Shown: piece by piece, positions 6,765-37,866 of the stretch
How positions within the stretch are numbered: the stretch's first letter is position 1
How the letters are laid out: the number at the start of each line of letters is the position of its first letter
The notes under the pieces: model-generated
Database searches by the model: none
What the model was told of the DNA's origin: nothing
What the model saw: only the letters and a program-made list of their open reading frames with translations
Virus record (IMG/VR): IMGVR_UViG_3300027749_002876
Location: 1-64,000 of that record
Direction: 5' to 3' (one strand)
Length of the DNA: 64,000 nucleotides
Program-made: the position numbers and the translations under genes

Positions 6765-8807
6765 ATGAACTTAAAAGAGCTTGATTCCTTCAAAATATCT
6801 GACGCCGTCACTTTCCATGACAAGCTTAACCCTGCGTTGTGGGCAGGAAATAAATTGCGTCCTGAAGTTAAAAATCAACTAGAAGAAATAGCAAAAGACT
6901 TCCTAGAAGAAATGGGTATCAATGATTTAGATGTTAGAGATATTACTATCTCTGGGTCTAACGCCGCATACAGTTATACAAAACACAGTGACTTGGATTT
7001 ACATCTCTTAGTCAATATAAATGATTTACCTAATAATGATATATACCGTGAATTCTTTGACGCAAAGAAATCATTATACAACGATAACCATGATATAACT
7101 ATTCATGGGGTTCCCGTAGAGTTATATATACAAGATGCCGCACAACCATCAGTGTCGTTAGGAGAATACAGTTTACAAAATGATAAGTGGTTGCGTATTC
7201 CTACAAAGCGTAGAGCTAACTTTGACCAATCAGCTACAAGATTGAAGTATGAAAAATTACTTGATATTGTAGAAAGAGCATTAGACTCAAAGAACTTAAC
7301 TAAAATTCAAAAAGTATTAAAGAAGATTAAGCAATATCGTCAAGCCGGGTTAGATAAAGGTGGCGAGTTTGGTCCTGAGAATTTAGCATATAAAGCATTG
7401 CGTAGTCAGGGGTATATTACAAAATTACACGATTTAAAAAACAAGTTGCATAGTGAGGTATTAACCATTGAAACTATGTATCAAAACATTGATGAAACCT
7501 TTGACCAACCTTATAAACTTAAATGGGAAAAAAGTGATTACGGTGACGTTGATGCCTATGCTAAAATGGATGATGGTAATTATCTAAGTATTATGTTCAA
7601 CAAAGGATATAATCAAGATAAGGAAGAAGCATGGAGTGTTGAGTTCTACAGAAACAACAGCCAAGAAGTTACCGGTGAGGGTGATGCACAACGTGTATTT
7701 GCTACTGTATTAAGTGCTATTCAAACATTCATTAAAAAATACAAGCCCAACAAAGTAATCTTTTCAGCTAGTAAAGAAGTTGAAGATGGACAAAACTCAG
7801 AAAGTAGAGCAAGACTATATGATAGTTTAGTTCAGCGTTATGCTAGAGCATGGGGATTTAGAGCATTTCGTGCTGATACTGGTAATAAAGTTATATACGA
7901 ATTAAGTAGAAAGCAACCGGTAGATGAAGATATCAGCCGTAGAGGATTCTTAAAAGGCATGGGCGCGGCAGCGGTAACAGGTAGTGCTAAGGCTGGTCAA
8001 TATCAATCTTCTACTGAAATAAGTCCAGAGCAGATGCAACAAATTTGGAAGCCAAGAAAAGGTGAGTTAGAAACTAGATGCTATGCTATATTAAAATCAT
8101 TTGCTAATAGTATAGCCGAATCGCATCCTGATTGGGTTAAAGTAATTCAAAAAATAAAAGTAAACACTACTTTAGGTGATAAAGTATTTCGTCAAGGAAA
8201 TGCCGCAAATTCTAGAGTATCATCTAGGGTAGTAAATGGTAAACCGATAGGTGTACAAGCCGGTCAAATTGGTATCGAAACAACTGTATTTTGGGATGCT
8301 CCTAATGATACGCTTGCTTTTATTTTAGGTCATGAGTGTGGACATATAATTATGAATCATGGGTTTTCTTTGGCATCTGATGCTAGAAATAATGAACAAG
8401 AAGCAGATATTATTGGAGCCTCTCTTGCTAAAAAAATAGGTTATGACAGGGCTAATTTCTTTAATTTTTTATTCAATGCTAAAGCTGAACAATTAAAAAA
8501 TGGATCACCCAATGATCCTCATTTAGAACCAGTTGATAGAGTAAAGTTTTTGAAAAAGAATGCTGATTTTGAATTATCACATAACACTATACAATATATT
8601 GATTCACTTGCTCAACAACTAAAGCAAGGCTTAGCAGAAGCAAGTGGCTATATCCCTAGTGAAAAAGAAAAAAACGATCCACGTTTTAAGACAGCATTAA
8701 CAGTAGATGTAGGACCATATAGCATCAAAAAGAACGCAAAAGCATTTAGCTGGCTTACATCAAGGGCCGGCATTCCACCAACAGCAAGCCCAAATGGTAA
8801 GGTATGA
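6765..8807 (+). CDS. modular polyprotein: Pol-beta-type nucleotidyltransferase + unknown domain + internal Tat signal and M48-like HExxH peptidase + short tail module
   Basis: GSN...SDLDLH...ELY; SRRGFLK at 7935-7955; HECGH at 8331-8345, EQEAD; start moved to the ATG 4 nt after TAAATA. Confidence 0.75.
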   Translation: MNLKELDSFKISDAVTFHDKLNPALWAGNKLRPEVKNQLEEIAKDFLEEMGINDLDVRDITISGSNAAYSYTKHSDLDLHLLVNINDLPNNDIYREFFDAKKSLYNDNHDITIHGVPVELYIQDAAQPSVSLGEYSLQNDKWLRIPTKRRANFDQSATRLKYEKLLDIVERALDSKNLTKIQKVLKKIKQYRQAGLDKGGEFGPENLAYKALRSQGYITKLHDLKNKLHSEVLTIETMYQNIDETFDQPYKLKWEKSDYGDVDAYAKMDDGNYLSIMFNKGYNQDKEEAWSVEFYRNNSQEVTGEGDAQRVFATVLSAIQTFIKKYKPNKVIFSASKEVEDGQNSESRARLYDSLVQRYARAWGFRAFRADTGNKVIYELSRKQPVDEDISRRGFLKGMGAAAVTGSAKAGQYQSSTEISPEQMQQIWKPRKGELETRCYAILKSFANSIAESHPDWVKVIQKIKVNTTLGDKVFRQGNAANSRVSSRVVNGKPIGVQAGQIGIETTVFWDAPNDTLAFILGHECGHIIMNHGFSLASDARNNEQEADIIGASLAKKIGYDRANFFNFLFNAKAEQLKNGSPNDPHLEPVDRVKFLKKNADFELSHNTIQYIDSLAQQLKQGLAEASGYIPSEKEKNDPRFKTALTVDVGPYSIKKNAKAFSWLTSRAGIPPTASPNGKV

Positions 8808-10006
8808 ACGATACTATTTGTAAATATGTATTCAATAGTATCACCATATCAAACAGCGGAACAGTAGACCCTTGTTGTGCACCAAATGGCCCGCATACTA
8901 AAGTATACCATGATAAAATAAAAAATCCTTTAGTTATACATGATGACTTTAATGAGGTATTGAACAACACCCAAATAGTTAATCTTAGAAAATCAATGGT
9001 TGCCGGAGAAAAAAATTCACTATGCGATACATGTTGGCAGAGTGAAAGAATTAATGGTGAGAGTGAGAGAACTTTAGGAAATACAAATTTACGAAATTCT
9101 GATGTATATAACAAAATAATTGATTTTTCAAATATATTTCATATTAACTTATTTTTAGGAAATAAATGTAATTTAGCATGTAGAATGTGTAGTCCTTGGT
9201 GCAGTTCATTAATAGCAAAACAAACTGACATTATTTACCAACGACCACCTACACCAATTATTCAATTTAATGATGATACTCAACAAAGAATCATTGAATT
9301 TATAGACAATAGTGAAAACTTAGAAAAAATTCATATGTATGGTGGTGAACCATTAATAAATGATTTCTATGATTTAATTTGCTCACATTTAATAGCTAAT
9401 GGAAGAGCCTCAAAAATCACATTGGATCTTTCAACTAATCTGCAAGTTGATTTAGAAAGAAAAAATGAATTACATCGTCACTTTAAGAATGTACACATTG
9501 CAGTAAGTGTAGACGGTGAGGGGGATACATATGAGTACATCAGATGGCCCGGTAATTGGAATAAAATACAAAATAACTTAAAAATATTAAGTAATACTAG
9601 GAACGATTTCCATGTCTCATCAGTAGTACAAAATTTAAATATTGATAATCTGTCAAATTTGATGGTATATTTAAGCACCATTGAAAATTTTAAATATCAA
9701 AATAGTACATACCGCAAAGTAACTAGTCACACCAATATAAATGATATTAAAATTATACCAACATGGGTTATAGAGCGTGAAATAGATCGTTTAAAAGCAT
9801 TAAATCAAAACATGAATTATACTATACATGCTTTAGTTAAGATGCTAGAAGCCGAAGTTGAACCATCACGTAACTTAGCATACGAAGAAGTTGCTACTTT
9901 CTTCAAACAACAGAAAGATTGGGATTCTCTTAGAAATCAAAATCTTTTTAAAACAAAGCCTCATTTTTTAGAGTTGGCCAAGCAATTTAACATCGAACCC
10001 TGGTAA
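8804..10006 (+). CDS. radical SAM protein with N-terminal SPASM/twitch-like Cys cluster
   Basis: CNLACRMC, GGEP, N-terminal C...CC...CxxC. Confidence 0.85.
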   Translation: MNDTICKYVFNSITISNSGTVDPCCAPNGPHTKVYHDKIKNPLVIHDDFNEVLNNTQIVNLRKSMVAGEKNSLCDTCWQSERINGESERTLGNTNLRNSDVYNKIIDFSNIFHINLFLGNKCNLACRMCSPWCSSLIAKQTDIIYQRPPTPIIQFNDDTQQRIIEFIDNSENLEKIHMYGGEPLINDFYDLICSHLIANGRASKITLDLSTNLQVDLERKNELHRHFKNVHIAVSVDGEGDTYEYIRWPGNWNKIQNNLKILSNTRNDFHVSSVVQNLNIDNLSNLMVYLSTIENFKYQNSTYRKVTSHTNINDIKIIPTWVIEREIDRLKALNQNMNYTIHALVKMLEAEVEPSRNLAYEEVATFFKQQKDWDSLRNQNLFKTKPHFLELAKQFNIEPW

Positions 10007-10057
10007 GTTCTAATTGATATGGTATTTGATAAATACTACATAACTTTGGAATTCGCT

Positions 10058-10855
10058 ATGAAAATCAATCAAATCGTACAAGAAACTACTACATCGGGAT
10101 CCGTTGCCCCAGTAGAGCATAGTTTTGTCAAAATGCAAACTCGCAGTCCTAGTGTCTATGGAAATACAAAAGCAGGATCACTATTCAAAGGTAAAAAGAC
10201 TAGTAAGCCTTTTGCTAACAGCATCAATGAGGGAGCAATGAACCAACTTTCAATGGACTTGAAAGGTGGAGTTGATGGATTATCTGACGAAGAATTTCAA
10301 AAGAAATATAAGATGACTAAGCAAGAAGCTCGCAAAGAGTTGACCGCTAATAGAAAAGACAACAAGAAGCCTGAAAAAGTTAACGAAGCTGACTTACAAG
10401 AAGATGATATCATAGTAGTTCCTGGTTATGGCCGCACGAGAAAAACTGGATTTACAAAGCATGGTCAAAGTCGTGTTGACCATGAAGTTGAAATGGCACG
10501 TAGTGATGTACTAGCTACAATGAAGAATGCCAGAGTAATCTACGAACTATTAAAAAATAAGTCAGAAGAAGAAGGATTAGAAGGCTGGGTACAAGAAAAA
10601 CTTATCAAAGCAAACGATTATCTAAACGCAGTAAAAGAATACTACGATGAAAAATTAATGCAACGAGAAGGCAAGATTGACTTTGCTAAAAAGATACAAA
10701 AAAACGTAGACAAGAGTAACAAGGCAGTAGTAAAGACTAGTAAAGAAGTTGGCTCAAGAGTTGCTGATATTGGTGCAGGTGGCAAAGAATATAATGTCAA
10801 AACTGACAAAGCATGGGATGATGCACACAAAGCTAAAGAAAGTAAAACAAAATGA
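10058..10855 (+). CDS. modular putative head-internal protein
   Basis: MKINQIVQE N-terminus; INE/VNE/LQE junctions; TAAATA upstream; start refined from 10019. Confidence 0.65.
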   Translation: MKINQIVQETTTSGSVAPVEHSFVKMQTRSPSVYGNTKAGSLFKGKKTSKPFANSINEGAMNQLSMDLKGGVDGLSDEEFQKKYKMTKQEARKELTANRKDNKKPEKVNEADLQEDDIIVVPGYGRTRKTGFTKHGQSRVDHEVEMARSDVLATMKNARVIYELLKNKSEEEGLEGWVQEKLIKANDYLNAVKEYYDEKLMQREGKIDFAKKIQKNVDKSNKAVVKTSKEVGSRVADIGAGGKEYNVKTDKAWDDAHKAKESKTK

Positions 10856-13800
10856 GTAGCATTTTAAAAGGTTTACAACTAAACGAATTATCTAATAAAA
10901 AATTAGGTGACTACAAAACAGCCGCAGGTGCTGATGCTACTGCCGCTGATAAAGAAGGTAACTATAAGCGTGGCGACAAGCGTATGAGTGGTATTATCAA
11001 AGCAACTAAGAAACAGTTTGCTAATGATGAAAGAAAAAAAGATGTGACAGAAACAGGCATTCCATTTCGTGGAGTGGGCGGCGCATTCAATCGCGGTGAT
11101 GATGAGCGACATGATTTAGATGTACCAAAACAAGTAAGACCTCAAGTTTGGGGCTTAAAGATCAATGGCAAAGTATGGAGCAAAGGTGGAAAATCAGTTA
11201 CATTCAATAGTAAAGACGCTGCCTTGAATATAAGAAATTCTATATTAAAGAATCGTCCTGATTTAGAAATTGGTTTAATAACTAAGGGCGGACAACAAGG
11301 TATGGCGGAAGCCACTGGTGATAAACCTTTTGACAATATGATGAAGAACATATCAAAAGGTACTAATAAACAAAAAACCTTAGACCGCAAGGAACAGCAA
11401 AAACAAACTCAACAACGAGCACGTGATGCTTTTGACAATATGTTTGGTGGTGGCAATCCTGCAGACAAATTAAAAATTAGAGAGCAAGGTGTGGCGGAAG
11501 GCTCAACTAACAGTAAATCAATAATTACTGAAACACGCACATACAAGTTATGGGAAAGTGCTGGTAAGAAGTTATATGAAGCACAACTAACAGCCGATCA
11601 AATTAATCAAATTTTTCAACAAGTAGAACAGGGTGCAACAGCGGCTGGCGGTAATCGCACTATGCTTGGCAGAGGCAAAGATGCTACTGCCGCTATAAGT
11701 AAAGCCTGGGAAGAGTTAAAAACTAAAGTACAAAATTCAGGACCTATTAAAGGTGTTGACGCTATGTATGACAAGGCTGCTGAACAATTAAAACAAGCAA
11801 CTGGTGGCGATCAAGGTGTCATGCAGTATGTTCAGAAGTATCGTGATTTTGCTAAAAAACATCCAATTGCACAGAGTTTAATTTATTCAGCATTGATTGC
11901 GGCTGCTGGTATTTCAGGTGCAGGTATTGGTGGTGCAGCCGCATTAGGTCTATTCAAACTAGTAGACAAACTATTGCAAGGCGAAAAGTTCAGTAGTGCC
12001 GCATACGCCGGTGCTAAAACTGGTGGCATGGCTTATGCCGCTGGCCAGATTGGTCAAGCGTTAAAAGGTACGCCTCAACAAGAATTACCCGGAGCACAAG
12101 GAGCACCTGGTCAATCTGAACTAGATCAAATCTATATGAATCGTGCTCAAGGGATGCAAGGCTCGGGTTATACGCAAACTGCAACTGGTCAAACAGGTGA
12201 CTTTGGACAACCAACATATAATATTATACCAGATGGTGGTGGTAGTTCGTATGACCAAGCATTCAAACAAGGTCTTGCAAAGTTTGCTGTCAACCCTAGT
12301 AACCCAAGCGCAAACGATATAATGCGAGCCAAAGACTATGCAGGAAAAGTAGCTTCTGGTATGCTTAAGCCTGTTAAGGAATCAGTAGAACTAACTGAAA
12401 GTCAAATCTTCTTACTGATCGGTAAGATAGTTGAACGTCACCGCAAACTTGATGAAGGGATCATGGACACCATCAAAGGCGCCGCAGGTAAGGCAGTTGA
12501 CTGGGCCAAGACCAAAGGCACTAACTTAACAACTAAAGTTACTGCTGACAAACTATTACAAGCATGGAAGAAAGCAGGTAGCCCAACTGACAGCTTAGAC
12601 ATTGCTAGTATTGTTCAACGAGCTGGCGTGCCAACAGCTACTATTAAACAAGTGTTTACTAACATGAAAATACCAGTGCCAGGTCAACCAGCAGTGGCAG
12701 CAACACCAGGTCAACCAGCAGTGGCAGCAACACCAGGTGCTAAACCAGCAGTGGCAGCAACACCAGGTGCTAAACCAGCAGTGGCAGCAACACCAGGTGC
12801 TAAACCAATTCAGACAACTACACCAGCTATAGTATCAGCACCGGCGGCAGCACCTGCAACCAAAATGGCAGTTCCTGCTCAAAAAACAACTATACCTCAA
12901 GTAGCACCTGTGGCTAAAGCGGCCGGAGCTACAGCACCTCAGGGGTTTAATGCTAGTAATGTAATGAAGATGCCTGGTATGGAAAAGTACGCTAAACCAG
13001 CAGTTGCAAAACCTGCGAATTTCAGCGGTGGCCCAACTGGTTACTCTAGTATGAATACTACATTTAAACAACCAGCAGTAAAACCAGCAATGGCAGCAAC
13101 ACCAGGTGCTAAACCAGCAGTGGCAGCAACACCTGTTGCACGTGTAGCAGAGGAATGGAGTCAAAAATACAAAAGCAGTATCAACTGTAGCCACCCCAAA
13201 GGCTTCTCACAAAAAGCTCACTGTGCTGGCAAGAAAAAGCATAATGAAAGTATTGAGATGGAAATGGTCTGTGAGGATTGCGGAATGTGTCAAACACACG
13301 GAGATCATTCACATGACAACTTAGAAGAAGCCTGTTGGAAAGGTTATCACAAAGAGGGTAACAAAAAGATGTTTGGAAAACAATATCCAGACTGTAGAAA
13401 GAATACAAAGGAAGGTGTGGCGAAGGGCCTATCAGAAATGGACAAATCACAAACTCCGCCAGGACGAGACGGTCACGTAAGTCATGGCACATACGGTTCG
13501 AGAGACAAGAAAGATCCAGATTCTGGTAAGAAGCAATACTACGGCAAAATGGAACGCCCTGAAAAAACAACCAAAACGGCATCGGATATTCTTAACAAAG
13601 CATTTAATAAAGGTGTAGCGGAAGAACAACATAGTTGCCCACATTGCGGTGGCGAGATGGTCAGTGAAGAACTAATGAACGAAAAGAAAGATGCTTGCTA
13701 CTACAAAGTCAAGAGCCGTTATAGTGTATGGCCTAGTGCTTACGCTAGTGGTGCATTAGTCAAGTGTCGTAAAAAAGGCGCAAGCAACTGGGGCAACGGC

Positions 13801-14514
13801 GGCAAGAAGAATGAGAGTTCTATTTTAGAAGGTATTGAACAAGCAGATGAAAGTTTACATGATTGGTTCAATAAAGAAAAATGGGTTCGCATGGATACTA
13901 AAGGAAAGATTAAAGGTCCATGTGCAAGAGAACCAGGAGAAGGTAAACCAAAATGTTTGCCACAAGCAAAAGCGCATAGCCTAGGTAAAAAAGGTCGTGC
14001 AAGTGCCGCACAACGCAAACGCAGAGAAGATCCTAATCCAGACCGGCATGGTTCAGCTATAAATGTCAACACAAAGAAAAAATCTAACGAAAATATAGGC
14101 GAGGGTTGGAGAGAAAAACTAGGCGCAGCCGCATTAGCCGGTTCTATGGCATTAGGCGCAGCCGGTGCACATGCTAGAGTTACCCCTGATGGACAAGGTG
14201 GCTTTACCGGTGGATTAAAACCCACAGCAACCGTGACAGCACCAGATAATACTCCATCTGCTACCGCACCTACTGCTTCATCTGACACATCAGATCCTTT
14301 TAAAGGTTTAGTCCGTGCTGATAGTGCCGATAGACAAGCAAAGACTATAACTGTTGACGGAAAAGAGTATGGACTTGTTGAAATATCCCCAACTGATATT
14401 AGACCACGTGGTGGACAACGAATCGTTGTTCCTCAAGCAGTATTAGGAGAACGAGGTATAGGAAACTATACAGGTATTCTAGTAGGTGATAGAGTATTTG
14501 TTATAAGTAAGTAA
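10852..14514 (+). CDS. 1220-aa modular polyprotein, putative head-internal/ejected cargo
   Basis: many short basic or Cys-containing modules separated by GVAE/LEE/MNE/LDE-type sites; hydrophobic segment; internal signal-like peptide. Confidence 0.7.
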   Translation: MSSILKGLQLNELSNKKLGDYKTAAGADATAADKEGNYKRGDKRMSGIIKATKKQFANDERKKDVTETGIPFRGVGGAFNRGDDERHDLDVPKQVRPQVWGLKINGKVWSKGGKSVTFNSKDAALNIRNSILKNRPDLEIGLITKGGQQGMAEATGDKPFDNMMKNISKGTNKQKTLDRKEQQKQTQQRARDAFDNMFGGGNPADKLKIREQGVAEGSTNSKSIITETRTYKLWESAGKKLYEAQLTADQINQIFQQVEQGATAAGGNRTMLGRGKDATAAISKAWEELKTKVQNSGPIKGVDAMYDKAAEQLKQATGGDQGVMQYVQKYRDFAKKHPIAQSLIYSALIAAAGISGAGIGGAAALGLFKLVDKLLQGEKFSSAAYAGAKTGGMAYAAGQIGQALKGTPQQELPGAQGAPGQSELDQIYMNRAQGMQGSGYTQTATGQTGDFGQPTYNIIPDGGGSSYDQAFKQGLAKFAVNPSNPSANDIMRAKDYAGKVASGMLKPVKESVELTESQIFLLIGKIVERHRKLDEGIMDTIKGAAGKAVDWAKTKGTNLTTKVTADKLLQAWKKAGSPTDSLDIASIVQRAGVPTATIKQVFTNMKIPVPGQPAVAATPGQPAVAATPGAKPAVAATPGAKPAVAATPGAKPIQTTTPAIVSAPAAAPATKMAVPAQKTTIPQVAPVAKAAGATAPQGFNASNVMKMPGMEKYAKPAVAKPANFSGGPTGYSSMNTTFKQPAVKPAMAATPGAKPAVAATPVARVAEEWSQKYKSSINCSHPKGFSQKAHCAGKKKHNESIEMEMVCEDCGMCQTHGDHSHDNLEEACWKGYHKEGNKKMFGKQYPDCRKNTKEGVAKGLSEMDKSQTPPGRDGHVSHGTYGSRDKKDPDSGKKQYYGKMERPEKTTKTASDILNKAFNKGVAEEQHSCPHCGGEMVSEELMNEKKDACYYKVKSRYSVWPSAYASGALVKCRKKGASNWGNGGKKNESSILEGIEQADESLHDWFNKEKWVRMDTKGKIKGPCAREPGEGKPKCLPQAKAHSLGKKGRASAAQRKRREDPNPDRHGSAINVNTKKKSNENIGEGWREKLGAAALAGSMALGAAGAHARVTPDGQGGFTGGLKPTATVTAPDNTPSATAPTASSDTSDPFKGLVRADSADRQAKTITVDGKEYGLVEISPTDIRPRGGQRIVVPQAVLGERGIGNYTGILVGDRVFVISK
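12679..12807 (+). repeat. in-frame tandem repeat, 27/30-nt units encoding PG(Q/AK)PAVAAT; further copies at 13081-13134
   Basis: ccaggtcaaccagcagtggcagcaaca x2 then ccaggtgctaaaccagcagtggcagcaaca x2.5. Confidence 0.95.
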
Positions 14515-14967: not shown

Positions 14968-15158
14968 TGAAGGCAAAGGAAATATATAAGGGTTTCAAAA
15001 CTTATTCTGCTAAGATATTAGTGAAGAACCCTCACTATTCCGTTCATATGGATGCTATCGTAAACGCCAAAGACGTGGCGCAAGCAAGACAACTTATCAA
15101 ACTACAATACAATGTAGATGATGGCAGAATTGGTACTATTAAAGAAATAAAACAATGA
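14967..15158 (+). CDS. hypothetical protein
   Basis: 63 aa, coupled by TAATG to dps. Confidence 0.7.
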   Translation: MKAKEIYKGFKTYSAKILVKNPHYSVHMDAIVNAKDVAQARQLIKLQYNVDDGRIGTIKEIKQ

Positions 15159-15967: not shown

Positions 15968-15998
15968 AGATAAATATAGTATAACAGGAGAAAAAGTT

Positions 15999-16226: not shown

Positions 16227-16802
16227 ATGCGTATTGGGGAAGTTTTATCAGAATCAGCAATAAATAAACTAGCAACAAAATTGCCTAGCTTAGAAAAGCA
16301 CGACTATACTACTCTAGATAAGCTACTACAAACCGTAGCCAAACAACACAATCTTACTGGAAAAGCGTTACATGACTTATTTGTTAAAAAATTTCATACA
16401 ACACCAGATAATTGGATTAAGAACAAAATAGATGAGGATGATGTTGATTCTGATTTGCAAAATGAAGTTGACAAATTCTGTGAGTGGGCTTGTCAACAAC
16501 TTCATGTACAAAATAAACCACATATTGAATTGAGCATGGATACTGAAGAAGCTCAAACAAATCATCACACCGGAGGTCATGTCATGGGAGATGATAATAT
16601 TTGGGTATACGTGAATAATCGCAATCTAGTTGATGTCTTACGCACAGTATTCCATGAATTGGTACATGTTCGTCAGGGTGAGTTGAACATGATATCACCG
16701 GGAGACAGTTATCCCGGTAGCCCGATTGAAGCAATGGCAGATATGCTAGCAGGCAAATATATTAAAATCTATGGTGAAAAGAATCATAAAATTTTTCAAT
16801 AA
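16227..16802 (+). CDS. HExxH metallopeptidase-like protein with capsid-targeting-like N-terminus
   Basis: RTVFHELVH...EAMAD; MRIGEVLSE. Confidence 0.7.
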   Translation: MRIGEVLSESAINKLATKLPSLEKHDYTTLDKLLQTVAKQHNLTGKALHDLFVKKFHTTPDNWIKNKIDEDDVDSDLQNEVDKFCEWACQQLHVQNKPHIELSMDTEEAQTNHHTGGHVMGDDNIWVYVNNRNLVDVLRTVFHELVHVRQGELNMISPGDSYPGSPIEAMADMLAGKYIKIYGEKNHKIFQ

Positions 16803-18436: not shown

Positions 18437-18455
18437 AGTATTTCAAGGAGAAATT

Positions 18456-29574: not shown

Positions 29575-30057
29575 ATGGCAAACAAAAAATTCTTTTCAAC
29601 AAAGACATACAGACAAATAGGTCCTGTCGCATATCGTCAATGGCGTGCTGACAGTCATTGTAACTTAATTCATGGTTACGCTATGAGTTTCCACTTTGAG
29701 TTTGAAGCTGACACATTAGATGCTCGTAATTGGGTAACTGACTTTGGCGGTCTAAAGCCACTCAAAGAAGTATTAGAAGAATGGTTTGACCATACTTTAT
29801 TAGTTGCACAAGATGACCCTATGCGTGAACATCTGTTAGAACTAGGTAGATTAAAACTAGCTAAGATTACAGAAGTAGAACGTACTGGTTGTGAAGGTAT
29901 TGCTGACTTCTTATACGAATATATTAACACAATCTTTTTACCCAACTGCGGTAGCGAAGAAGCTAAACGTGTATGGTGCTGTAGAGTAGAGGTACGTGAA
30001 ACTGATAGCAATATGGCAGGACGTGGTGGTCACAGGGAAGATAGAGAGTTTGAATAA
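29575..30057 (+). CDS. queD: 6-carboxytetrahydropterin synthase
   Basis: CNLIHGY, DFGGLK, FDH, E-T motifs. Confidence 0.9.
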   Translation: MANKKFFSTKTYRQIGPVAYRQWRADSHCNLIHGYAMSFHFEFEADTLDARNWVTDFGGLKPLKEVLEEWFDHTLLVAQDDPMREHLLELGRLKLAKITEVERTGCEGIADFLYEYINTIFLPNCGSEEAKRVWCCRVEVRETDSNMAGRGGHREDREFE

Positions 30058-30473
30058 TGTTGAAAACAGAAATGGTAGATAAGGTAGGACATACCTTAGT
30101 AGACATATTTCATAGGCTTGCATTGTTTGCTATTGGTGCCGCAACAGTATGGGCAGCCGGATGTACTTTCGTTGAACTGTTTCAGAAACATCATGCCTCA
30201 GTCGGTGACCTGTTGTTGATGTTTATTTATTTAGAAATGGGTGCAATGGTAGGCATTTATTTCAAGACCAATCATATGCCTGTTAGGTTCTTGCTATACA
30301 TTGCAATCACAGCACTAACACGACATATGGTAGATATAATGAGTCATCAGCCAATTAACATTGTTGAAATGTTATCTGTAGCCGGTTCTACATTTGTTAT
30401 AGCAATAAGCGTATTAGTTATTAGATATACTAGTGCAAAATATCCTAGCAACAATAAAGACGAGGTAGCTTAA
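30057..30473 (+). CDS. psiE: phosphate-starvation-inducible PsiE-family membrane protein
   Basis: DLLLMFIYLE, PVRFLLYIAITALTR, four hydrophobic segments. Confidence 0.85.
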   Translation: MLKTEMVDKVGHTLVDIFHRLALFAIGAATVWAAGCTFVELFQKHHASVGDLLLMFIYLEMGAMVGIYFKTNHMPVRFLLYIAITALTRHMVDIMSHQPINIVEMLSVAGSTFVIAISVLVIRYTSAKYPSNNKDEVA

Positions 30474-30664
30474 TGAATAGTTTAGAAAAAATCTGGGCAA
30501 GAGCGACCGGTCATCTGATGGGTAATACAGATGATGATCGTCCTGACGTTCCCATTCTTACATTGGGTGAAGCAAGAATTGCATTGTTCCTAAAAACTTT
30601 CTGGGTGGTGTTACATGTGATAACATGTTGTTTCATCATAGCAAATACAATCAGACATTGGTAA
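30473..30664 (+). CDS. small membrane protein
   Basis: C-terminal hydrophobic helix, coupled ORF. Confidence 0.7.
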   Translation: MNSLEKIWARATGHLMGNTDDDRPDVPILTLGEARIALFLKTFWVVLHVITCCFIIANTIRHW

Positions 30665-30665
30665 T

Positions 30666-31514
30666 ATGGCACAATTAAAAATTTCAGAATTATTTTATAG
30701 TATTCAGGGTGAAGGTAGATACATGGGTGTTCCCTCTGTGTTCCTACGAACTTATGGATGTAATTTCACATGCGGTGGCTTTGGAATGTCTAAGGGAGAA
30801 ATGAGTAGTGAGAGAGATGTTATTGCAATTAAAGCAGAAGATTATACAGATTATAAATCCCTACCGCTTGTCAGCACAGGATGTGATAGTTATGCATCTT
30901 GGGACCCTCGTTTCAAACATCTTAGTCCTATGCTCACTACCGATAATATTGTTGGTAGTATTATGGATATACTCCCTCATAGTCGTTGGATGGATGAGCA
31001 CCTTGTTATCACGGGCGGTGAACCTCTGCTTGGATGGCAAAGAGCATATCCAGAATTACTTTCACATGAAAAAATGAGAAGTCTCAAAGAGATTACATTT
31101 GAAACTAATGGCACACAAGAACTCAGTCAAGATTTAAAAATATATCTACAACAATGGAAGATTTACAGAGAAAAAAATGCACTTACATTTAGTGTTAGTC
31201 CTAAACTAAGTATCAGCGGTGAAAAGTGGGAAGAAGCAATACTTCCCGATGTTATTACTCAATATGAAGACGTTGGTTTTGTATATCTTAAATTTGTTGT
31301 AGCGACAGAAGATGATGTACTAGAAGCAGAGAAGGCAGTTAAAGAATATCGTGTTGCAGGATTCAGAGGTCCAGTCTACTTGATGCCGTGCGGTGGTGTT
31401 GAAAGTATGTACAGTATGAATGCTAAGAATGTAGCGATTGCGGCAATGAAGCGTGGATGGCGTTATAGTGACAGACTTCAAGTGCCGTTGTTTAAAAACG
31501 AGTGGGGCACATAA
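30666..31514 (+). CDS. queE: 7-carboxy-7-deazaguanine synthase (radical SAM)
   Basis: ELFYSIQGEG, CNFTC...CD with insert, TGGEP, ETNGT, SVSPK. Confidence 0.92.
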   Translation: MAQLKISELFYSIQGEGRYMGVPSVFLRTYGCNFTCGGFGMSKGEMSSERDVIAIKAEDYTDYKSLPLVSTGCDSYASWDPRFKHLSPMLTTDNIVGSIMDILPHSRWMDEHLVITGGEPLLGWQRAYPELLSHEKMRSLKEITFETNGTQELSQDLKIYLQQWKIYREKNALTFSVSPKLSISGEKWEEAILPDVITQYEDVGFVYLKFVVATEDDVLEAEKAVKEYRVAGFRGPVYLMPCGGVESMYSMNAKNVAIAAMKRGWRYSDRLQVPLFKNEWGT

Positions 31515-33874: not shown

Positions 33875-34807
33875 TTATAGTCCAATCTTGCCTGGATACA
33901 TTGGACCAGATTTGATTCTTTCACCACCGTCAAAATAAGAAATCTCAATTGGCAATGTGTCCCATCCAAGTTTTGCGGCTGCCATAATTCTATGATTACC
34001 TTCGTTAACCCACGCACTACCATCATATGCTACATTAATGAAGGGTTTATACTCTTCGCCGGTATGTCCGTGTAATGGTAATTTACCGGTGCTGTTCATT
34101 ATTTTCATTATGGCAGCAAGATCATTGTGACGAATATTTGATTGCTCACGGCGCATACCCGGTATTTGTCTTAGTATATTAACTGGAACATTAACATTCC
34201 TAACAGTAGCAGTAGTCTTGCCCATATAGGGTAGACCATTACGGTCAGGACTTTTACTTTTAGCATAATCAATAGCGTCTTGCAACCAATCTTCATTGGG
34301 TACATCTACGCTTAATACACCTTCTGTCATTTTATTCTGGGGTTTGTCATATGCTCTACGGTCAGTTAAATGATATTCCATTCCGTTGTTTTTGCTATAT
34401 TTCTGATATAAATCCCAATCAGGCAACAAGCGTTGAATCATCTTAGCATACAATCCAATACGGCTATCTTCTTTAGCGTTGAATGTAATTTCTTCTACTT
34501 TATCAAGACCATACTCTTTGATAAATTCACGTGTGATATCAACTGCGGTAGATAATACTTGTGCTGAATTGCCTGTGCCAGTACGCCCGAACAAGTCTAA
34601 ATATTCGGGATCAGTATCATTTCTTAACAAACGAAATTGTATTTCCCACTTAGTAGGGTTACTATGTGGATTACTAAAAGCAAGCCATTGATAATCTCTA
34701 TCACCTACTGTAAAATTGGCAGCGGCTTCTTCACCACCGCGAAACTTCCATTCCCAGTTCTTCTTACCCGGCTGAAATATTTCAGTAATGAATTCAGTGG
34801 CTCTCAC
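33875..34807 (-). CDS. two-module protein: domain shared with the 6765 polyprotein + ParB/Srx-like domain
   Basis: MRATEFITE start, MTE junction, EGNHRIMAA (ParB-type GxHR). Confidence 0.7.
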   Translation of the reverse strand: MRATEFITEIFQPGKKNWEWKFRGGEEAAANFTVGDRDYQWLAFSNPHSNPTKWEIQFRLLRNDTDPEYLDLFGRTGTGNSAQVLSTAVDITREFIKEYGLDKVEEITFNAKEDSRIGLYAKMIQRLLPDWDLYQKYSKNNGMEYHLTDRRAYDKPQNKMTEGVLSVDVPNEDWLQDAIDYAKSKSPDRNGLPYMGKTTATVRNVNVPVNILRQIPGMRREQSNIRHNDLAAIMKIMNSTGKLPLHGHTGEEYKPFINVAYDGSAWVNEGNHRIMAAAKLGWDTLPIEISYFDGGERIKSGPMYPGKIGL

Positions 34808-35358
34808 AGACTCTTACCCCAACGAGTGTTGATTACATTCCAGTTGATAATCTTCCACTGTTCTTTTAAGTATTTCTTTTTATCACTACCATAGTCTAGT
34901 ATAAAAGCATGTTCCCACCAGTCAATAAGCAACAGTATGTCATCACGTACTTCATGGTTTTTAATTGTTTTAACTGTGCCATCATATGCAAGATAGACCC
35001 AACCACTACCCTGAATCTTCATAGCAGTTTCTTCAAACTCTTTACAAAATGATTCAAAGCTACCAAACTTTTTATTGATAAATCCAAACATAGGGCCGTT
35101 TGGTTTATTGTTATTTCTTATTTCACGAAATTGCGGAAAGTATGTATTGTGCAAGAATGCACCAGCAAAGTTAAAATCAGGATCGCCTTCACCTTTGTTG
35201 TATCTTTTAGCATAGCCTTTGGCTAGAGTATCATAATGAAAATGAATACTTTCTTTACTAAGTACAGGTGCTAAATCACCCTCTTCAAAGTTAAGTGGAA
35301 TGATTTCTATATCTTGAGACTTTGACTTATCCTCAAGTAACTGAATCAAATCACGCAT
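34804..35358 (-). CDS. sod: Fe/Mn superoxide dismutase with capsid-targeting-like N-terminal extension
   Basis: LAPVLS...HFHY, FNFAGAFLHN, GSGWVYL, DWWEHAF. Confidence 0.9.
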   Translation of the reverse strand: MRDLIQLLEDKSKSQDIEIIPLNFEEGDLAPVLSKESIHFHYDTLAKGYAKRYNKGEGDPDFNFAGAFLHNTYFPQFREIRNNNKPNGPMFGFINKKFGSFESFCKEFEETAMKIQGSGWVYLAYDGTVKTIKNHEVRDDILLLIDWWEHAFILDYGSDKKKYLKEQWKIINWNVINTRWGKSL

Positions 35359-35359
35359 C

Positions 35360-36973
35360 TTAGTGTCTCAATAGCAATGTTGAAATAATGTTGGGATCGT
35401 TAGCACTGATGTCACCTTCACCTGGAGCAACGATAACATTGTACTTCATACCTGCCGGGATAGATTTACGCTTGGCCATGTACTCATCGTATGATAAGAT
35501 ACTGTTAGCACTTAGTCCATACTCACTAGCCAATCTTTGTTTTAGTTCAGGTAACTTGTCAGGTTGTACTTGCCATTGGCCACTTGACCCCTTAACTAGG
35601 TTTTTCTTTTCATCCTTAACTAACAAGTCTTGGAACAAATCATCTGGAACAATACGACTGTTCTTAGTTGTATCTAAGTTAGCGTCTTTAGCTTTAACTT
35701 GTTTCTCTTGACTTGTGTTAGCACCTTCACTCCAATTGATAATGAAGTTTGGTGGTTTCTGTGCAAGTGCGGCACCTGCCATCTTAGTGTAAGCATAGAA
35801 TTTAACGTCAGGATGCTTTGCAGCCATCTTCAATGCCATGTCTAGGTATTCTGGGCTAAAGAAGTCGCCTGCATCATGCCAGCGAATAGTAGTTTGCCAA
35901 CCATTAGGGAATTTCTTGTCACCCTTCTTACCCATTGCTTCTTCTTTAGATATCTCGGCACTTAACTGGTTAAAGAAACCACTTGGATCATTCAATAGAT
36001 ACGTTAATATTCTTCCGTCACTTTGCCAAGCAGCCTTGAACTGTACTTTACCACCCTTCATAGCGAAACAATCTACTTTACATGAGCCAGCACCCGGACA
36101 TGTGTTAACAATGATTAGATTGTTAGTAGATTCATCTACTGCGATACCAGTTAATGCGGCAAAGCCAACATTGAAGAATTGCTCAAACTCTCCATTGCTA
36201 TGCTTCATTTTTTCGTTTTGCTTTAGTAATGATTTTGGGCGTTGTGATAATGATTGTTTAATTTTATCTTCATCATATGTCTTACCATCTGGACCCAAGT
36301 ATTCAATGATACTTGACCGATGGATATAAGGCATCTTGTACTTGTCGCCTTTAGTCTTACCAGAGACATACTTCTCATTACCCTTTTTGTCTAATTTAAC
36401 TTGACCAGTCTTCTTGTCAATGTCATCAGTACCTTTAATACGATTCATATAGTCTTGGAACTCTTGACCTTTCAAATCACGGGTACTTGCTGGTAGTGTA
36501 GTAGCTTCTTCTAGACCAGATAGTTTACGAATTCTATCTAGTGTTTCTGAAATATCTTCTCCAAAACGTTTTTGATATACATTAGAATCCATTGAATTTC
36601 TACTACCAATAGTTTTCATTCCCTCACCGGCTAGCAATAAATCATACATTAATTTAATAACTTTTACAGGAGAAGTCAATGTGTCAACTCTATCATAGAA
36701 ATAAGCAATTTTTTCAGGCTTCATTCTACGAGCAGGCTTGCCTTTAATTAATTCTTTAGCACGTGCCTTAAGAGTGGCAAAATCACGAATTTTTTCTAAT
36801 TCATGTATATCATTTATATCAAAATTATCACCTTCAATATCTTCATCTACTTCTTCTTCCCCGGGCATATCGCCAGCTTTAGCAACAAATTGTTGAGGTG
36901 TCATAACTTGAACACCATTAACTGCTCCGGGTAGCTTTGGCGTCACACCTTCGTATAATTCTTTAAAGTTCAT
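35360..36973 (-). CDS. modular protein with C-terminal phage Gp88-like Cys-cluster domain
   Basis: TCPGAGSCKVDCFA, IRWHDAGDF, FYAYTK; MNFKELYE start; VDE/ISE/LEE junctions. Confidence 0.65.
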   Translation of the reverse strand: MNFKELYEGVTPKLPGAVNGVQVMTPQQFVAKAGDMPGEEEVDEDIEGDNFDINDIHELEKIRDFATLKARAKELIKGKPARRMKPEKIAYFYDRVDTLTSPVKVIKLMYDLLLAGEGMKTIGSRNSMDSNVYQKRFGEDISETLDRIRKLSGLEEATTLPASTRDLKGQEFQDYMNRIKGTDDIDKKTGQVKLDKKGNEKYVSGKTKGDKYKMPYIHRSSIIEYLGPDGKTYDEDKIKQSLSQRPKSLLKQNEKMKHSNGEFEQFFNVGFAALTGIAVDESTNNLIIVNTCPGAGSCKVDCFAMKGGKVQFKAAWQSDGRILTYLLNDPSGFFNQLSAEISKEEAMGKKGDKKFPNGWQTTIRWHDAGDFFSPEYLDMALKMAAKHPDVKFYAYTKMAGAALAQKPPNFIINWSEGANTSQEKQVKAKDANLDTTKNSRIVPDDLFQDLLVKDEKKNLVKGSSGQWQVQPDKLPELKQRLASEYGLSANSILSYDEYMAKRKSIPAGMKYNVIVAPGEGDISANDPNIISTLLLRH

Positions 36974-37866
36974 TTTTTAAGATTCCTAATTTTCTGTTCT
37001 GCCAACATTACCAATTGTTCTAATTGCTCTACACTTTCACAATGCCATCTACGCAAACTCTTATTGATGTTACTGTTTGGATCATTTGCTGTTTTAGCAC
37101 CGGTACGATGTTTCTTCATACCTCGCATTCTAGCACAGAATGATTTGCGACGGGCGGCGGCCTTGCTACCTTTTTTAAGTTTGCTTGGCTTAGTTGTAAC
37201 TGCTGTTTGAATCTTGCTACCAGGATGACTACGGCGATAGCTAGCTACACTCTTTTTACTCATGCCACCCACACGCTTGTGATTGTACTTTGACCAGTTC
37301 TCGCCTTCGTTTAATTCTAAATCACTGTGATTAAACGCAATGTATGTGTCACCATTAACATCACCTGGACGAATTAAGAACACACCTGCATCGTCATCAC
37401 CTGATTCATCTTGACCAATTTCCCAACCCATTGCTTCCAATGTTCTTTGTGCTTTAGCCATTTGTTGTTCTGTGCCCAACCACCATTGTGCGGCAAGTTG
37501 ACGTAATATTTCTTCCTCATCAGGTTCACGGTCATCATCACTACCAAGTGCAAATTCATCTAAGTAACCTTCATCAATATTTGGATTACCAATTTGCTCT
37601 GCTACACTATTTAAACGGTCATTACTAGTTGTGACATAACTATACATCCAACCATCTAAACTAGTACCACTGTCTAGTTTTTCTTTGATTTTTACAGCAT
37701 TTCTAATTATTTCACGAATCTCACCCTGAGCCATGCCATTGACTTGTTCATCTTCCATTGCATAGCCTTCATTTTTAGGCTTTTTACCAGCTTTCTTCAT
37801 GGCAATAGCAATGGCAGCTTGCTGTGCTGGATTGGCTGCTTCATTGATAAATTCTTTTATTCTCAT
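36970..37866 (-). CDS. modular basic putative head-internal protein
   Basis: MRIKEFINE start; RRKSFCARM...LRRWHC module; KNE/IDE/LDE/LNE junctions. Confidence 0.65.
   Translation of the reverse strand: MRIKEFINEAANPAQQAAIAIAMKKAGKKPKNEGYAMEDEQVNGMAQGEIREIIRNAVKIKEKLDSGTSLDGWMYSYVTTSNDRLNSVAEQIGNPNIDEGYLDEFALGSDDDREPDEEEILRQLAAQWWLGTEQQMAKAQRTLEAMGWEIGQDESGDDDAGVFLIRPGDVNGDTYIAFNHSDLELNEGENWSKYNHKRVGGMSKKSVASYRRSHPGSKIQTAVTTKPSKLKKGSKAAARRKSFCARMRGMKKHRTGAKTANDPNSNINKSLRRWHCESVEQLEQLVMLAEQKIRNLKK

What the first reader, a model, noticed from the sequence alone, without database searches (positions are those of the whole stretch)
6765..37866. Putative capsid-cargo system: T4 CTS-like N-termini and Glu-cleavage junctions on otherwise unrelated enzymes
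Seen: genes in two late clusters start with a similar 8-12 aa motif ending in E: MKINQIVQE (10058), MSSILKGLQLNE (10852), MRIGEVLSE (16227), MRATEFITE (34807), MRDLIQLLE (35358), MNFKELYE (36973), MRIKEFINE (37866), and more weakly MNLKEL (6765). Their bodies are strings of modules split by LNE/VDE/LEE/ITE/VAE. Known: T4 internal proteins IPII/IPIII carry the capsid-targeting sequence MKTYQEFIAE, which gp21 removes. Inference: the phage packages a large toolkit (nucleotidyltransferase, two HExxH peptidases, ParB-like, Gp88-like, SOD, basic Cys modules) as polyproteins that are cut up in the prohead and injected.
Basis: partly seen in the sequence, partly recalled or inferred. Interest (0 to 1): 0.85.

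Follow-up and report, generated by a model that had tools for sequence, protein, structure and literature searches.

The report
T4-like address tags on phage cargo polyproteins
A 525-kb freshwater phage marks many unrelated enzymes with a short T4-like N-terminal tag and joins their modules at glutamate sites, which probably means they are loaded into the capsid and cut up there, though no experiment has yet shown this.

Summary
All eight N-termini exist. Four (37866-, 34807-, 10058+, 16227+) fit a strict consensus, M-[RK]-x-x-[EQD]-[FILV]-[ILV]-x-E. A profile built from independent relatives separates them from 1,146 other candidate starts. The other four are family-conserved variants.

The tag is kept in homologues with synonymous codon changes. 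A scan of IMG/VR found it at the start of 82 of 94 matched ORFs. T4 IPII/IPIII begin MKTYQEFIAE.

Modules are shuffled among relatives. Where a tagged module lies inside another protein, the preceding residue is Glu in 118 of 168 contexts (17 of 23 module families), usually with L/V/I/M at P3. AlphaFold places these Glu sites in low-confidence linkers.

Relatives carry a T4-type head operon with a Peptidase_S77 protease. This contig's own protease gene was not retrieved. [quoted passage not shown]

The genes are not in structural clusters, and neither packaging nor injection has been tested. Best reading (about 0.6): a greatly expanded T4-type capsid-targeting and prohead-protease cargo system. 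This is a new variant of a known kind.

The parts
6753..6760 (+). GATAAATA promoter-like site 5 nt upstream of the p681 start
6765..8807 (+). p681 polyprotein. Module A is an ANT-like nucleotidyltransferase (aa 10-234), B a DUF6934/GNAT-like fold (247-388), C a Tat-like signal plus M48 HExxH peptidase (389-~621), D a conserved C-terminal 'SGYIPS' module (626-680). The N-terminus MNLKE is a weak, non-canonical leader.
7488..7496 (+). IDE junction between modules A and B of p681
   Evidence: Breakpoint of homologue alignments; pLDDT<50 at 235-246; coordinates checked
7920..7928 (+). VDE junction between modules B and C of p681
7929..7997 (+). Internal twin-arginine (Tat)-like signal DISRRGFLKG...AKAG, starting directly after the VDE junction
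   Evidence: Pfam TAT_signal 19.5 bits, below the cut-off; 12 RRGFL contexts, all 3-4 residues after a leader or junction Glu
8631..8639 (+). LAE junction before C-terminal module D of p681
10028..10035 (+). GATAAATA promoter-like site upstream of p265/p1220
10058..10855 (+). p265, function unknown. Canonical leader MKINQIVQE at 10058-10084, followed by TTTSGS (compare T4 gp24 MAKINELLRE|STTT).
10852..14514 (+). p1220 polyprotein. Variant leader MSSILKGLQLNE (10852-10887); central module aa 232-607 with a hydrophobic segment; PAVAATPGAK repeats (12688-12800); string of basic Cys modules (DUF5872-type, aa 768-1080); signal-peptide-like segment near aa 1085-1108.
13144..13152 (+). VAE junction in p1220. 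The module that follows (EWSQKY...) is free-standing behind MRATEFITE in L206.
15969..15976 (+). GATAAATA promoter-like site upstream of the 71-aa ORF and p191
16227..16802 (+). p191. Canonical leader MRIGEVLSE (16227-16253), small helical module, IDE junction (16428-16436), HELVH zincin-like peptidase module.
37922..37929 (-). GATAAATA promoter-like site upstream of the four-gene minus-strand operon
36970..37866 (-). p298. Canonical leader MRIKEFINE (37840-37866), acidic middle part, LNE junction (37306-37314), basic DUF6321 module (29 K/R in 111 aa).
35360..36973 (-). Gp88-like p537. Variant leader MNFKELYE (36950-36973), conserved 35-aa peptide, VDE junction (36842-36850), variable insert, LEE junction (36506-36514; E156 invariant), conserved Gp88 domain.
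34804..35358 (-). Fe/Mn superoxide dismutase with a 17-aa N-terminal extension carrying variant leader MRDLIQLLE (35332-35358)
33875..34807 (-). p310. Canonical leader (GTG start) RATEFITE (34781-34807), DUF6934/GNAT-like module, MTE junction (34322-34330), ParB-like module that is free-standing behind MRAKEFITE in L021.

Best explanation
The window comes from a 524,565-bp freshwater phage of the T4 superfamily. At least eight of its genes, in four transcription units, encode capsid cargo.

Proposed mechanism:
1. Each protein starts with a roughly 9-residue propeptide, consensus M-R-A-x-E-F-I-x-E. It works like the T4 capsid-targeting sequence and directs the protein to the scaffolding core of the prohead.
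2. The propeptide ends in the [L/I/V/M]-x-E site that T4 gp21-family (Peptidase_S77) prohead proteases cut.
3. The same site separates the modules of the longer proteins. Inside the prohead they would therefore be cut into separate products. These are an ANT-like nucleotidyltransferase, GNAT-like modules, ParB-like modules, two HExxH peptidases, an Fe/Mn SOD, a Gp88 domain and small basic Cys modules.
4. The pieces would then be delivered with the DNA.

Shown here: the tag, its conservation and spread, the Glu junctions, their position in predicted linkers, the T4-type head operon with an S77 protease in relatives, and virion detection of two homologous modules in cyanophages.

Inferred: targeting, cleavage by the prohead protease, packaging and ejection.
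For: Genome identity:
- The window is positions 1-64000 of IMGVR_UViG_3300027749_002876.
- Its DNA polymerase is 42-48% identical to those of RaK2-like and Phosso jumbo phages.
- gp32 and UvsX homologues lie elsewhere on a contig of another sample that carries the same proteins as this one.

The tag:
- T4 IPII/IPIII start MKTYQEFIAE|A and gp24 starts MAKINELLRE|S.
- A matrix from independent relatives picks out four window genes.
- The tag is conserved in every homologue family.
- Synonymous codons vary, so selection acts on the peptide.
- The IMG/VR scan gave 82 of 94 matches at ORF starts. The unconstrained third position is mostly Ala. Up to four tagged genes sit in tandem. One hit lies elsewhere on this same contig, next to the large terminase.

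The junctions:
- In the strict test, P1 = E in 118 of 168 contexts, and 17 of 23 module families have at least 50% E.
- In the looser set, P1 is E 178 times and D 7 times, although D is the commonest residue at P2.
- p681 modules are shuffled, with every junction [VILM]-x-E.
- AlphaFold low-confidence segments coincide with E244, E388 and E625 of p681 and with E8, E44, E143 and E156 of p537.
- Tat-like RRGFL signals, which need a free N-terminus, occur seven times internally, always 3-4 residues after a junction Glu.

The protease and head operon:
- More than 600 related freshwater contigs carry Portal_T4, Peptidase_S77 and Gp23.
- Their scaffold, MCP and protease also start with short L-x-E leaders.
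- Homologues of p1220 lie within 10 kb upstream of the protease.

Virion evidence from the literature:
- T4-GC119, a string of the same basic Cys modules, was detected in S-SM1 virions (PMC3037559 Table S8).
- S-CREM2 ORF156, an NTase 36.7% identical to p681 module A, was detected in virions with 6 peptides. The neighbouring virion cytidylyltransferase starts MKNFSSFLTE|A (PMC10665884 Table 3).

Background on T4 gp21 and the CTS: PMC5694885.
Against: - There are no proteomic or biochemical data for this clade, and no cultured member was found.
- The cargo genes sit among metabolic and replication genes, not head genes.
- Across the clade, the promoter-like motif is hardly more frequent before tagged genes (18/174) than before other genes (88/1122).
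- The linkers are generally acidic, which explains part of the Glu excess.
- Four of the eight window tags are non-canonical. MNLKEL is weak.
- Tat- and Sec-like signals behind the tag fit export from the infected cell at least as naturally as ejection.
- The cyanophage GC119 proteins lack such a tag.
Confidence: 0.6

Rival explanations
1. These are polyvalent proteins in the sense of Iyer et al. 2017. They would be multi-domain conflict effectors processed by their own zincin/M48 peptidase modules or by a host protease, not by the prohead protease. The N-terminal tag would serve another purpose.
For: p681 and p191 carry HExxH peptidase modules and p310 carries a ParB-like module. Both domain types are typical of polyvalent proteins. 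Modular shuffling is extensive.
Against: Most tagged proteins and polyproteins have no peptidase module of their own, yet share the same junction motif. That uniform [LVIM]-x-E motif matches the known specificity of gp21-family proteases, and head proteins of the clade carry it too.
Confidence: 0.12
2. The tag and junctions serve export, not packaging. The proteins would be made late and cut in the cytoplasm. Modules with Tat- or Sec-like signals (peptidoglycan hydrolases, M48 peptidase) would then be sent to the periplasm for lysis or envelope remodelling. In the free-standing genes the tag would simply be the n-region of the signal peptide.
For: Five free-standing genes read tag + D[LM]SRRGFL + hydrophobic stretch + GH19 or LysM-SLT domain. 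TAT_signal scores 22.1 bits against a cut-off of 22.7.
Against: Most tagged proteins have no signal-like segment after the tag, including the SOD, NTase, ParB-like module, basic modules and many 120-aa families. The tag resembles the T4 CTS, not Tat n-regions. In SPN3US, removal of a propeptide from ejection protein gp47 likewise exposes an N-terminal hydrophobic helix.
Confidence: 0.1
3. The junctions are only flexible acidic linkers and recombination joints that let modules be shuffled. No cleavage occurs, and the shared N-terminus reflects common descent or recombination of a 5' gene cassette.
For: The linkers are E/D-rich and of variable length. The modules recombine freely.
Against: P1 is Glu 178 times and Asp 7 times, although Asp dominates P2. 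Tat-like signals inside polyproteins would have no function without cleavage. Synonymous variation in the tag argues against a conserved DNA cassette.
Confidence: 0.1
4. The short conserved N-terminus is a RiPP-type leader recognised by the radical SAM enzymes encoded nearby.
For: A twitch-domain radical SAM gene (8804-10006) lies between cargo genes. Distant homologues (about 25% identity) occur in 8 of the 80 tag-hit loci.
Against: The tagged proteins are large folded enzymes, not precursor peptides. The tag is only 9 residues long. Radical SAM genes are common throughout these genomes.
Confidence: 0.03

Closest known systems
Phage T4 internal proteins IPI/IPII/IPIII, Alt and gp24, with the capsid-targeting sequence removed by prohead protease gp21
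   Same: An N-terminal propeptide of about 10 residues with nearly the same pattern (T4 MKTYQEFIAE|A; here MRIKEFINE|A). It ends in [L/I]-x-E, the gp21 site. It sits on proteins that are otherwise unrelated to one another. Small basic proteins are among the cargo. Relatives have a T4-type head operon with an S77 protease.
   Different: The tag is one residue shorter, with consensus MRAxEFIxE. It marks many more gene families, mostly enzymes. The same site is also used internally, so long multi-module proteins would be cut into pieces. The genes are scattered among metabolic genes. Nothing has been tested experimentally.
Ejection and inner-body proteins of phiKZ, 201phi2-1 and SPN3US, processed by a gp21-like protease
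   Same: Giant phages package many proteins, which are cut after Glu by the prohead protease. Paralogues have conserved N-termini. Removing the propeptide can expose an N-terminal hydrophobic helix (PMC5694885).
   Different: Those proteases prefer A/S/G at P3 and the propeptides are often longer than 100 residues. Here P3 is L/V/I/M, as in T4, and the tag has 9 residues. No homology to the phiKZ-type proteins was seen.
Polyvalent proteins of phages and conjugative elements (Iyer et al. 2017, PMC5512222)
   Same: Several unrelated effector domains (zincin peptidase, ParB-like, GNAT, NTase) in one polypeptide, with mosaic evolution, proposed capsid packaging and proteolytic release.
   Different: That class has no shared short N-terminal tag or uniform Glu junction, and processing is proposed to be autocatalytic. 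Here the motif points to one trans-acting prohead protease.
Cyanophage virion proteins T4-GC119 (S-SM1), S-CREM2 ORF156 (NTase) and ORF154 (cytidylyltransferase)
   Same: They are homologous to the basic Cys modules of p1220 and p298 and to module A of p681. They were detected in purified virions of T4-like phages. ORF154 starts with a CTS-like MKNFSSFLTE|A.
   Different: The GC119 proteins examined lack the tag. The cyanophage NTase is a single-domain gene. No processing has been described for them.

Membership tests
T4-type CTS-bearing, gp21-processed head cargo | Short N-terminal propeptide (10-20 aa) ending in [L/I]-x-E and shared by otherwise unrelated proteins | tested here: met
   Four canonical and four variant tags in the window. 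The tag is conserved in homologues and widespread in IMG/VR. T4 sequences were read from NC_000866.
T4-type CTS-bearing, gp21-processed head cargo | A gp21-family (Peptidase_S77) prohead protease encoded by the same genome | tested here: inconclusive
   It was found with Portal_T4 and Gp23 in more than 600 related freshwater contigs, some with cargo homologues nearby. The gene of contig 3300027749_002876 itself was not among the loci returned.
T4-type CTS-bearing, gp21-processed head cargo | Cleavage after the Glu of the tag during head maturation | not testable with these tools
   Only indirect support: P1 = E at internal junctions and linker positions in the models.
T4-type CTS-bearing, gp21-processed head cargo | Presence of the protein in the virion | not testable with these tools
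   There is no cultured member. Homologous modules were detected in S-SM1 and S-CREM2 virions.
T4-type CTS-bearing, gp21-processed head cargo | Late co-expression with head genes | tested here: inconclusive
   GATAAATA lies upstream of all four cargo units in the window. [GT]ATAAATA lies upstream of the first head-operon gene in 22 of 46 relatives. Per-gene enrichment across the clade is weak, and there is no exact TATAAATA upstream of any cargo gene.
phiKZ/SPN3US-type processed ejection proteins | Cleavage motif with A/S/G at P3 (A/S/G-x-E) and long propeptides | tested here: not met
   P3 is mostly L, V, M or I, and the tag has 9 residues.
Polyvalent proteins (Iyer 2017) | Two to 15 unrelated effector domains in one polypeptide, with mosaic architectures | tested here: met
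   p681 (NTase + GNAT-like + M48 + C-terminal module), p310 (GNAT-like + ParB-like) and p1220. Architectures are shuffled in relatives.
Polyvalent proteins (Iyer 2017) | Gene neighbourhood with portal, terminase or head-morphogenesis genes | tested here: inconclusive
   Not so in the window. Two tagged genes lie next to the large terminase elsewhere on the contig. Cargo homologues lie near the head operon in L241, L251, L259 and L265.
Twin-arginine signal peptides | S/T-R-R-x-F-L-K motif plus hydrophobic region near a free N-terminus, scoring above the Pfam TAT_signal cut-off | tested here: inconclusive
   19.5 bits (p681, internal) and 22.1 bits (L186), against a cut-off of 22.7. The motif and hydrophobic region are evident in 12 contexts.
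Fe/Mn superoxide dismutase | Sod_Fe_C and Sod_Fe_N domains | tested here: met
   Sod_Fe_C scores 88.9 bits. Sod_Fe_N is partial at 23.4 bits, below its cut-off. NCBIfam SOD models match far below their equivalog cut-offs.

The most novel reading that the evidence does not exclude
An abundant clade of freshwater huge phages uses one universal 9-residue address tag plus Glu-junction polyproteins to load dozens of different enzymes into the capsid. The prohead protease then releases the modules. Some of the released modules (peptidoglycan hydrolases, an M48 peptidase) gain a Tat-type signal at their new N-terminus. After injection, the host's own Tat pathway would re-export them to the periplasm. 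This would be a two-step delivery route not described for any phage, and the tag would let the whole injected proteome be read directly from sequence.
Probability: 0.25. Interest if true: 0.85.

Novelty: new variant of a known kind. Interest (0 to 1): 0.66.

Why it matters
What huge phages carry into the cell besides DNA is largely unknown, because almost none are cultured. If the tag and Glu junctions mean what they mean in T4, the injected proteome of a very abundant freshwater phage clade can be predicted from sequence alone. More than 600 contigs carry its head protease.

That predicted proteome contains unexpected items: a superoxide dismutase, an aminoglycoside-type nucleotidyltransferase, GNAT-like and ParB-like modules, metallopeptidases, and wall hydrolases with export signals.

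It would also show that the T4 capsid-targeting principle, now used to engineer protein delivery by T4, has been scaled up in nature to polyproteins. It would provide a set of natural tags and cleavage sites to test.

Tried and rejected
- Megablast of both gene groups against 50,697 phage records found nothing. A small tagged family has no tblastn match in cultured phages either.
- The exact T4 late promoter TATAAATA is not upstream of any cargo gene and is not enriched. The variant GATAAATA is upstream of all four units. Across the clade, however, it is barely enriched per tagged gene, so I do not use it as strong evidence.
- phmmer with T4 gp20-24 and with K64-1 head proteins against the window and about 230 loci found no head genes there.
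- Three attempts to reach the S77 protease of this contig did not return it: an alignment-based scan, an exact-protein look-up and a close-relative scan.
- One step of walking from the second locus of the contig led to gp32 and UvsX, not to head genes.
- A fold search with the Gp88 model gave no significant PDB match. A PDB sequence search with p310 gave nothing.
- The first junction count included mis-called starts and a false family (homologues of 18405-18722). It was redone with strict filters.
- The 'moraphage' lineage paper concerns a different lineage: genomes of at most 307 kb that lack much of the machinery of other large phages.
- The RiPP-leader idea was considered and judged unlikely, because the tagged proteins are large enzymes.

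Full report
**What the window is.** The window is positions 1-64000 of IMG/VR contig 3300027749_002876, which is 524,565 bp long and comes from a freshwater metagenome. GC content is about 37%. Its family-B DNA polymerase (18719-21436) is 42-48% identical to those of Sinorhizobium phage Phosso, Xanthomonas phage XaC1 and the RaK2/K64-1 group. A second stretch of the same contig carries the large terminase (L146). On a 91-kb contig of another sample that carries the same proteins (L232), that region continues into gp32-like and UvsX-like genes. This is therefore a huge phage of the wider T4 superfamily. Nothing close exists among 50,697 deposited phage genomes.

**The observation.** All eight N-termini are present at the stated coordinates.
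- The gene at 34807 starts with GTG.
- The 10058 start is an internal ATG of the mechanical ORF 10019-10855. It is the true start, because homologues begin MKITQIISE, MKINQIINE or MRIKQIVE.
- The strict pattern M-[RKN]-x(2,3)-[EQ]-[FLIVM]-[ILVMY]-x-E occurs at 3-4 of 94 gene starts, against 4.6e-4 per internal position.
- A position matrix trained only on 108 leaders from other contigs scores 37866-, 34807-, 10058+ and 16227+ at 27.8, 26.2, 14.8 and 9.9. The next best of 1,146 candidate starts scores 0.4.
- The remaining four do not fit this matrix: SOD MRDLIQLLE, Gp88-like MNFKELYE, p1220 MSSILKGLQLNE and p681 MNLKEL. Each is conserved within its own family and ends in [LI]-x-E. Examples are M[NK][FI]x[EH]LxE|G in about 60 Gp88 homologues and MRD[LI]IxLLE in 26 SOD homologues.
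- MNLKEL is the weakest of the eight.

**The tag is a peptide-level signal and is widespread.**
- In 125 non-redundant leaders from loci that were not found through the tag, synonymous codons vary freely: GCA/GCC/GCT, TTT/TTC, ATA/ATC/ATT and GAA/GAG. This argues against a DNA or mRNA element.
- Of 94 matches in the 80 loci returned, 82 sit at the start of an ORF of at least 60 aa. The third residue, left free in the pattern, is mostly Ala, giving the consensus MRAxEFIxE.
- Several loci have two to four such genes in tandem.
- Half of these loci share other proteins with the window, such as a DNA polymerase at 60-84% identity.
- One hit lies elsewhere on this same contig. There, two small tagged genes (MRATEFVTE, MRAKEFISE) lie beside the large terminase.
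- For comparison, read from the T4 record: IPII and IPIII begin MKTYQEFIAE|A, IPI begins MKTFKEF...ITE|A, and gp24 begins MAKINELLRE|STTT. Window p265 begins MKINQIVQE|TTTSGS.

**The bodies are modular and the joints are Glu sites.** p681 consists of four modules.

| Module | Residues | Content |
|---|---|---|
| A | about 10-234 | nucleotidyltransferase |
| B | 247-388 | DUF6934 |
| C | 389 to about 621 | M48 HExxH peptidase |
| D | 626-680 | conserved C-terminal module |

- In relatives these modules are deleted, replaced, separated by other inserts or encoded alone.
- Module B is preceded by NIDE, VNE, VVE or VTE when internal, and by MRLLELKE when free-standing.
- Module C is free-standing behind MRAIEFLTE.
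- Module D is preceded by VSE, VAE, MAE, LAE or VTE.

I then ran a test that does not depend on reading alignments by eye. I took the sequence after the tag of every canonical leader protein and asked where it aligns inside other ORFs.
- After removing mis-called starts and one false family, 168 distinct internal contexts in 23 module families remained.
- The residue before the module is Glu in 118 of them, and 17 of the 23 families have Glu in at least half.
- In most of the other families a Glu lies one to three residues away, which suggests alignment offsets.
- In the looser set, P1 is Glu 178 times and Asp 7 times, although Asp is the commonest residue at P2. P3 is L, V, M or I in 137 of 244. 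Acidic linker composition alone would not give this Glu-over-Asp preference.

Junctions within the window that are supported in this way:

| Protein | Junction | Residue |
|---|---|---|
| p681 | IDE, VDE, LAE | E244, E388, E625 |
| p310 | MTE | E162 |
| p191 | IDE | E70 |
| p298 | LNE | E187 |
| p1220 | VAE | E767 |
| p537 | VDE, LEE | E44, E156 |

**Structure predictions.** The AlphaFold model of p681 (25-sequence alignment, mean pLDDT 63) has two confident domains, at 10-234 and 247-388. Segments with pLDDT below 50 fall at 1-9, 235-246, 389-444 and 618-631, and these contain the tag and the three junctions. The model of the Gp88-like p537 (44 sequences, mean pLDDT 67.5) has low confidence at 1-8, 34-55 and 117-160. 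These segments contain E8, VDE44, ISE143 and LEE156, and E156 is invariant in the alignment.

A fold search supports an ANT/AadA-type nucleotidyltransferase for module A and a GNAT-like fold for DUF6934, with weak E-values of 1e-4 to 1e-2. The G-S...D-x-D NTase motif is visible in the sequence. The Gp88 domain has no significant PDB match.

**Head genes and protease.** The window and the first 230 loci hold no head genes.
- In RaK2-like phage K64-1 the head genes lie about 7 kb upstream of the DNA polymerase. They comprise the portal, two small head proteins, the S77 protease, the scaffold and the MCP. Their products start MLFKDIFE|S, MANLKLLQE|A and MTKLEKLLKE|S.
- A scan with an alignment of gp21 homologues found freshwater IMG/VR contigs (GC 37-42%) whose protease is 43-51% identical to that of K64-1.
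- Precomputed Pfam hits confirm T4_baseplate, Portal_T4, Peptidase_S77 and Gp23 in that order.
- In this clade the scaffold starts MLDAFKQLVE|S, the MCP starts MSQLLNE|RW and the protease starts MKLAYLRE|H.
- Tagged genes (MRINEIITE, MKLSDVFSE) and homologues of p1220 lie within 10 kb upstream of the protease. L265 has a stand-alone gene 44% identical over 410 aa to p1220 residues 232-607.
- The protease gene of the window's own contig was not among the loci returned, so this point rests on relatives.

**Virion evidence from relatives.** The DUF6321 and DUF5872-type basic Cys modules of p298 and p1220 make up the cyanophage protein family T4-GC119. This family is listed as detected, with 13 peptide counts, in Supplementary Table 8 of Sullivan et al. 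2010, which summarises the S-SM1, S-PM2 and Syn9 virion proteomes. The column order indicates S-SM1 (PMC3037559).

Module A of p681 is 36.7% identical (E = 2e-32) to S-CREM2 ORF156. ORF156 is listed in that phage's virion proteome with 6 peptides and 15.2% coverage (PMC10665884 Table 3). The adjacent virion cytidylyltransferase starts MKNFSSFLTE|A.

**Context and expression.** The neighbours are DnaJ, a ClpA/B-type ATPase, an NMNAT-like gene, a twitch radical SAM enzyme, Dps, a secreted nuclease, a PP-loop ATPase, the DNA polymerase, GTP cyclohydrolase I, an epimerase and UvdE. These are not structural clusters. The four genes at 33875-37866 form the only minus-strand block in that part of the window.
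- GATAAATA occurs seven times in the window. Four of these sites lie directly upstream of the four cargo units, two are in other intergenic regions and one is intragenic.
- In relatives, [GT]ATAAATA precedes the first gene of the head operon in 22 of 46 cases. It is therefore probably a late-type promoter.
- Per gene across the clade, however, it is hardly enriched before tagged genes: 18/174 against 88/1122.

**Export-like signals.** The motif RRGFL followed by a hydrophobic stretch occurs in 12 distinct contexts. Five come right after the 9-residue tag. Seven are internal, each 3-4 residues after a junction Glu, including VDE|DISRRGFLKG in p681. The attached domains are GH19 or LysM+SLT wall hydrolases, or the M48 peptidase. 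Pfam TAT_signal scores are just below the cut-off. An internal Tat signal would be functionless without cleavage, so this supports processing. It also feeds the export rival.

**Comparison with known systems.**
- The closest is the T4 CTS/gp21 system (background in PMC5694885).
- The phiKZ/SPN3US systems also cut after Glu, but at A/S/G-x-E and with long propeptides.
- Polyvalent proteins share the multi-domain logic and the domain types (PMC5512222), but not the tag or the uniform junction.
- I found no paper describing this tag or these polyproteins.

**Verdict.** It is most likely a greatly expanded T4-type capsid-targeting and processing system, which makes it a new variant of a known kind. 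Packaging, cleavage and injection remain untested.

Noticed in passing
window 7929-7997; L186:413-1294, L119:2992-3609, L067:14162-14839, L092:15667-16314, L075:10134-10760: Twin-arginine-like signals (D[LM]SRRGFL plus a hydrophobic stretch) sit 3-4 residues after the tag or after an internal junction Glu. The attached domains are GH19 or LysM+SLT peptidoglycan hydrolases, or an M48 peptidase.
   Followed up: partly
window 3823, 6753, 10028, 15969, 27844, 37929(-), 63684: GATAAATA, one base off the T4 late promoter TATAAATA, occurs seven times and six of these are intergenic. It also precedes the head operon in about half of the relatives, so it is probably this clade's late-type promoter.
   Followed up: partly
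window 35360-36505 (Gp88 domain, aa 157-537 of the protein): The Gp88 domain has invariant Cys at positions 292, 298 and 302 (C-x5-C-x3-C) and an invariant WHDxGDFF motif. It has no significant PDB match, only weak TIM-barrel and radical-SAM-like hits (NifB, MqnE).
   Followed up: partly
window 12688-12800: There are four tandem copies of a PAVAATPGAK-type peptide repeat inside p1220, in the most GC-rich part of the window (GC 0.45 for 12001-14000).
   Followed up: no
window 8804-10006 and 44071-45333: The gene at 8804-10006 is an N-terminal-twitch radical SAM gene (NF033640, 238 bits) lying between cargo genes. Distant homologues of both this gene and the one at 44071-45333 recur in loci with tandem small tagged genes. 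Their role is unknown.
   Followed up: partly
window 15-3119 and 62530-63732: The phage encodes DnaJ and a ClpA/B-type double-AAA ATPase. A ClpX-like protein at 62530-63732 is inferred only from its N-terminal zinc-finger-like sequence. Such unfoldases could handle cargo or scaffold proteins.
   Followed up: no
window 17831-18424, 27917-28597, 29575-31514: The window carries a PP-loop ATPase and GTP cyclohydrolase I. QueD- and QueE-like N-termini were read by eye only. Together these suggest a 7-deazaguanine (queuosine-type) pathway, possibly for DNA modification.
   Followed up: no
window 18405-18722: A small protein directly upstream of the DNA polymerase is conserved in many loci of the clade and matches K64-1 gp130 in the same position. 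This is a piece of synteny with RaK2-like phages. It gave a false 'leader' hit that had to be removed from the junction statistics.
   Followed up: yes
L146:308-1552 (-), same contig as the window: A 414-aa protein two genes downstream of the large terminase starts MKISALLRE|A, much like T4 gp24 MAKINELLRE|S. It has no Pfam or PHROG match.
   Followed up: partly
window 15155-15967: An Endonuclease_NS family nuclease with a Sec-type signal peptide recurs next to tagged genes in at least five other loci.
   Followed up: no
L116, L117, L127, L136, L144, L158, L163, L188 and others: There are tandem arrays of roughly 125-aa paralogues. Each starts with MRAxEFIxE. The gene just upstream of each tagged gene ends in a conserved ...SPVKAFKGY(K/P)(R/K), and where checked (L116) its stop overlaps the next start as ATGA. 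A related small tagged protein of the same contig (131 aa, L146) has no tblastn match in cultured phages.
   Followed up: partly
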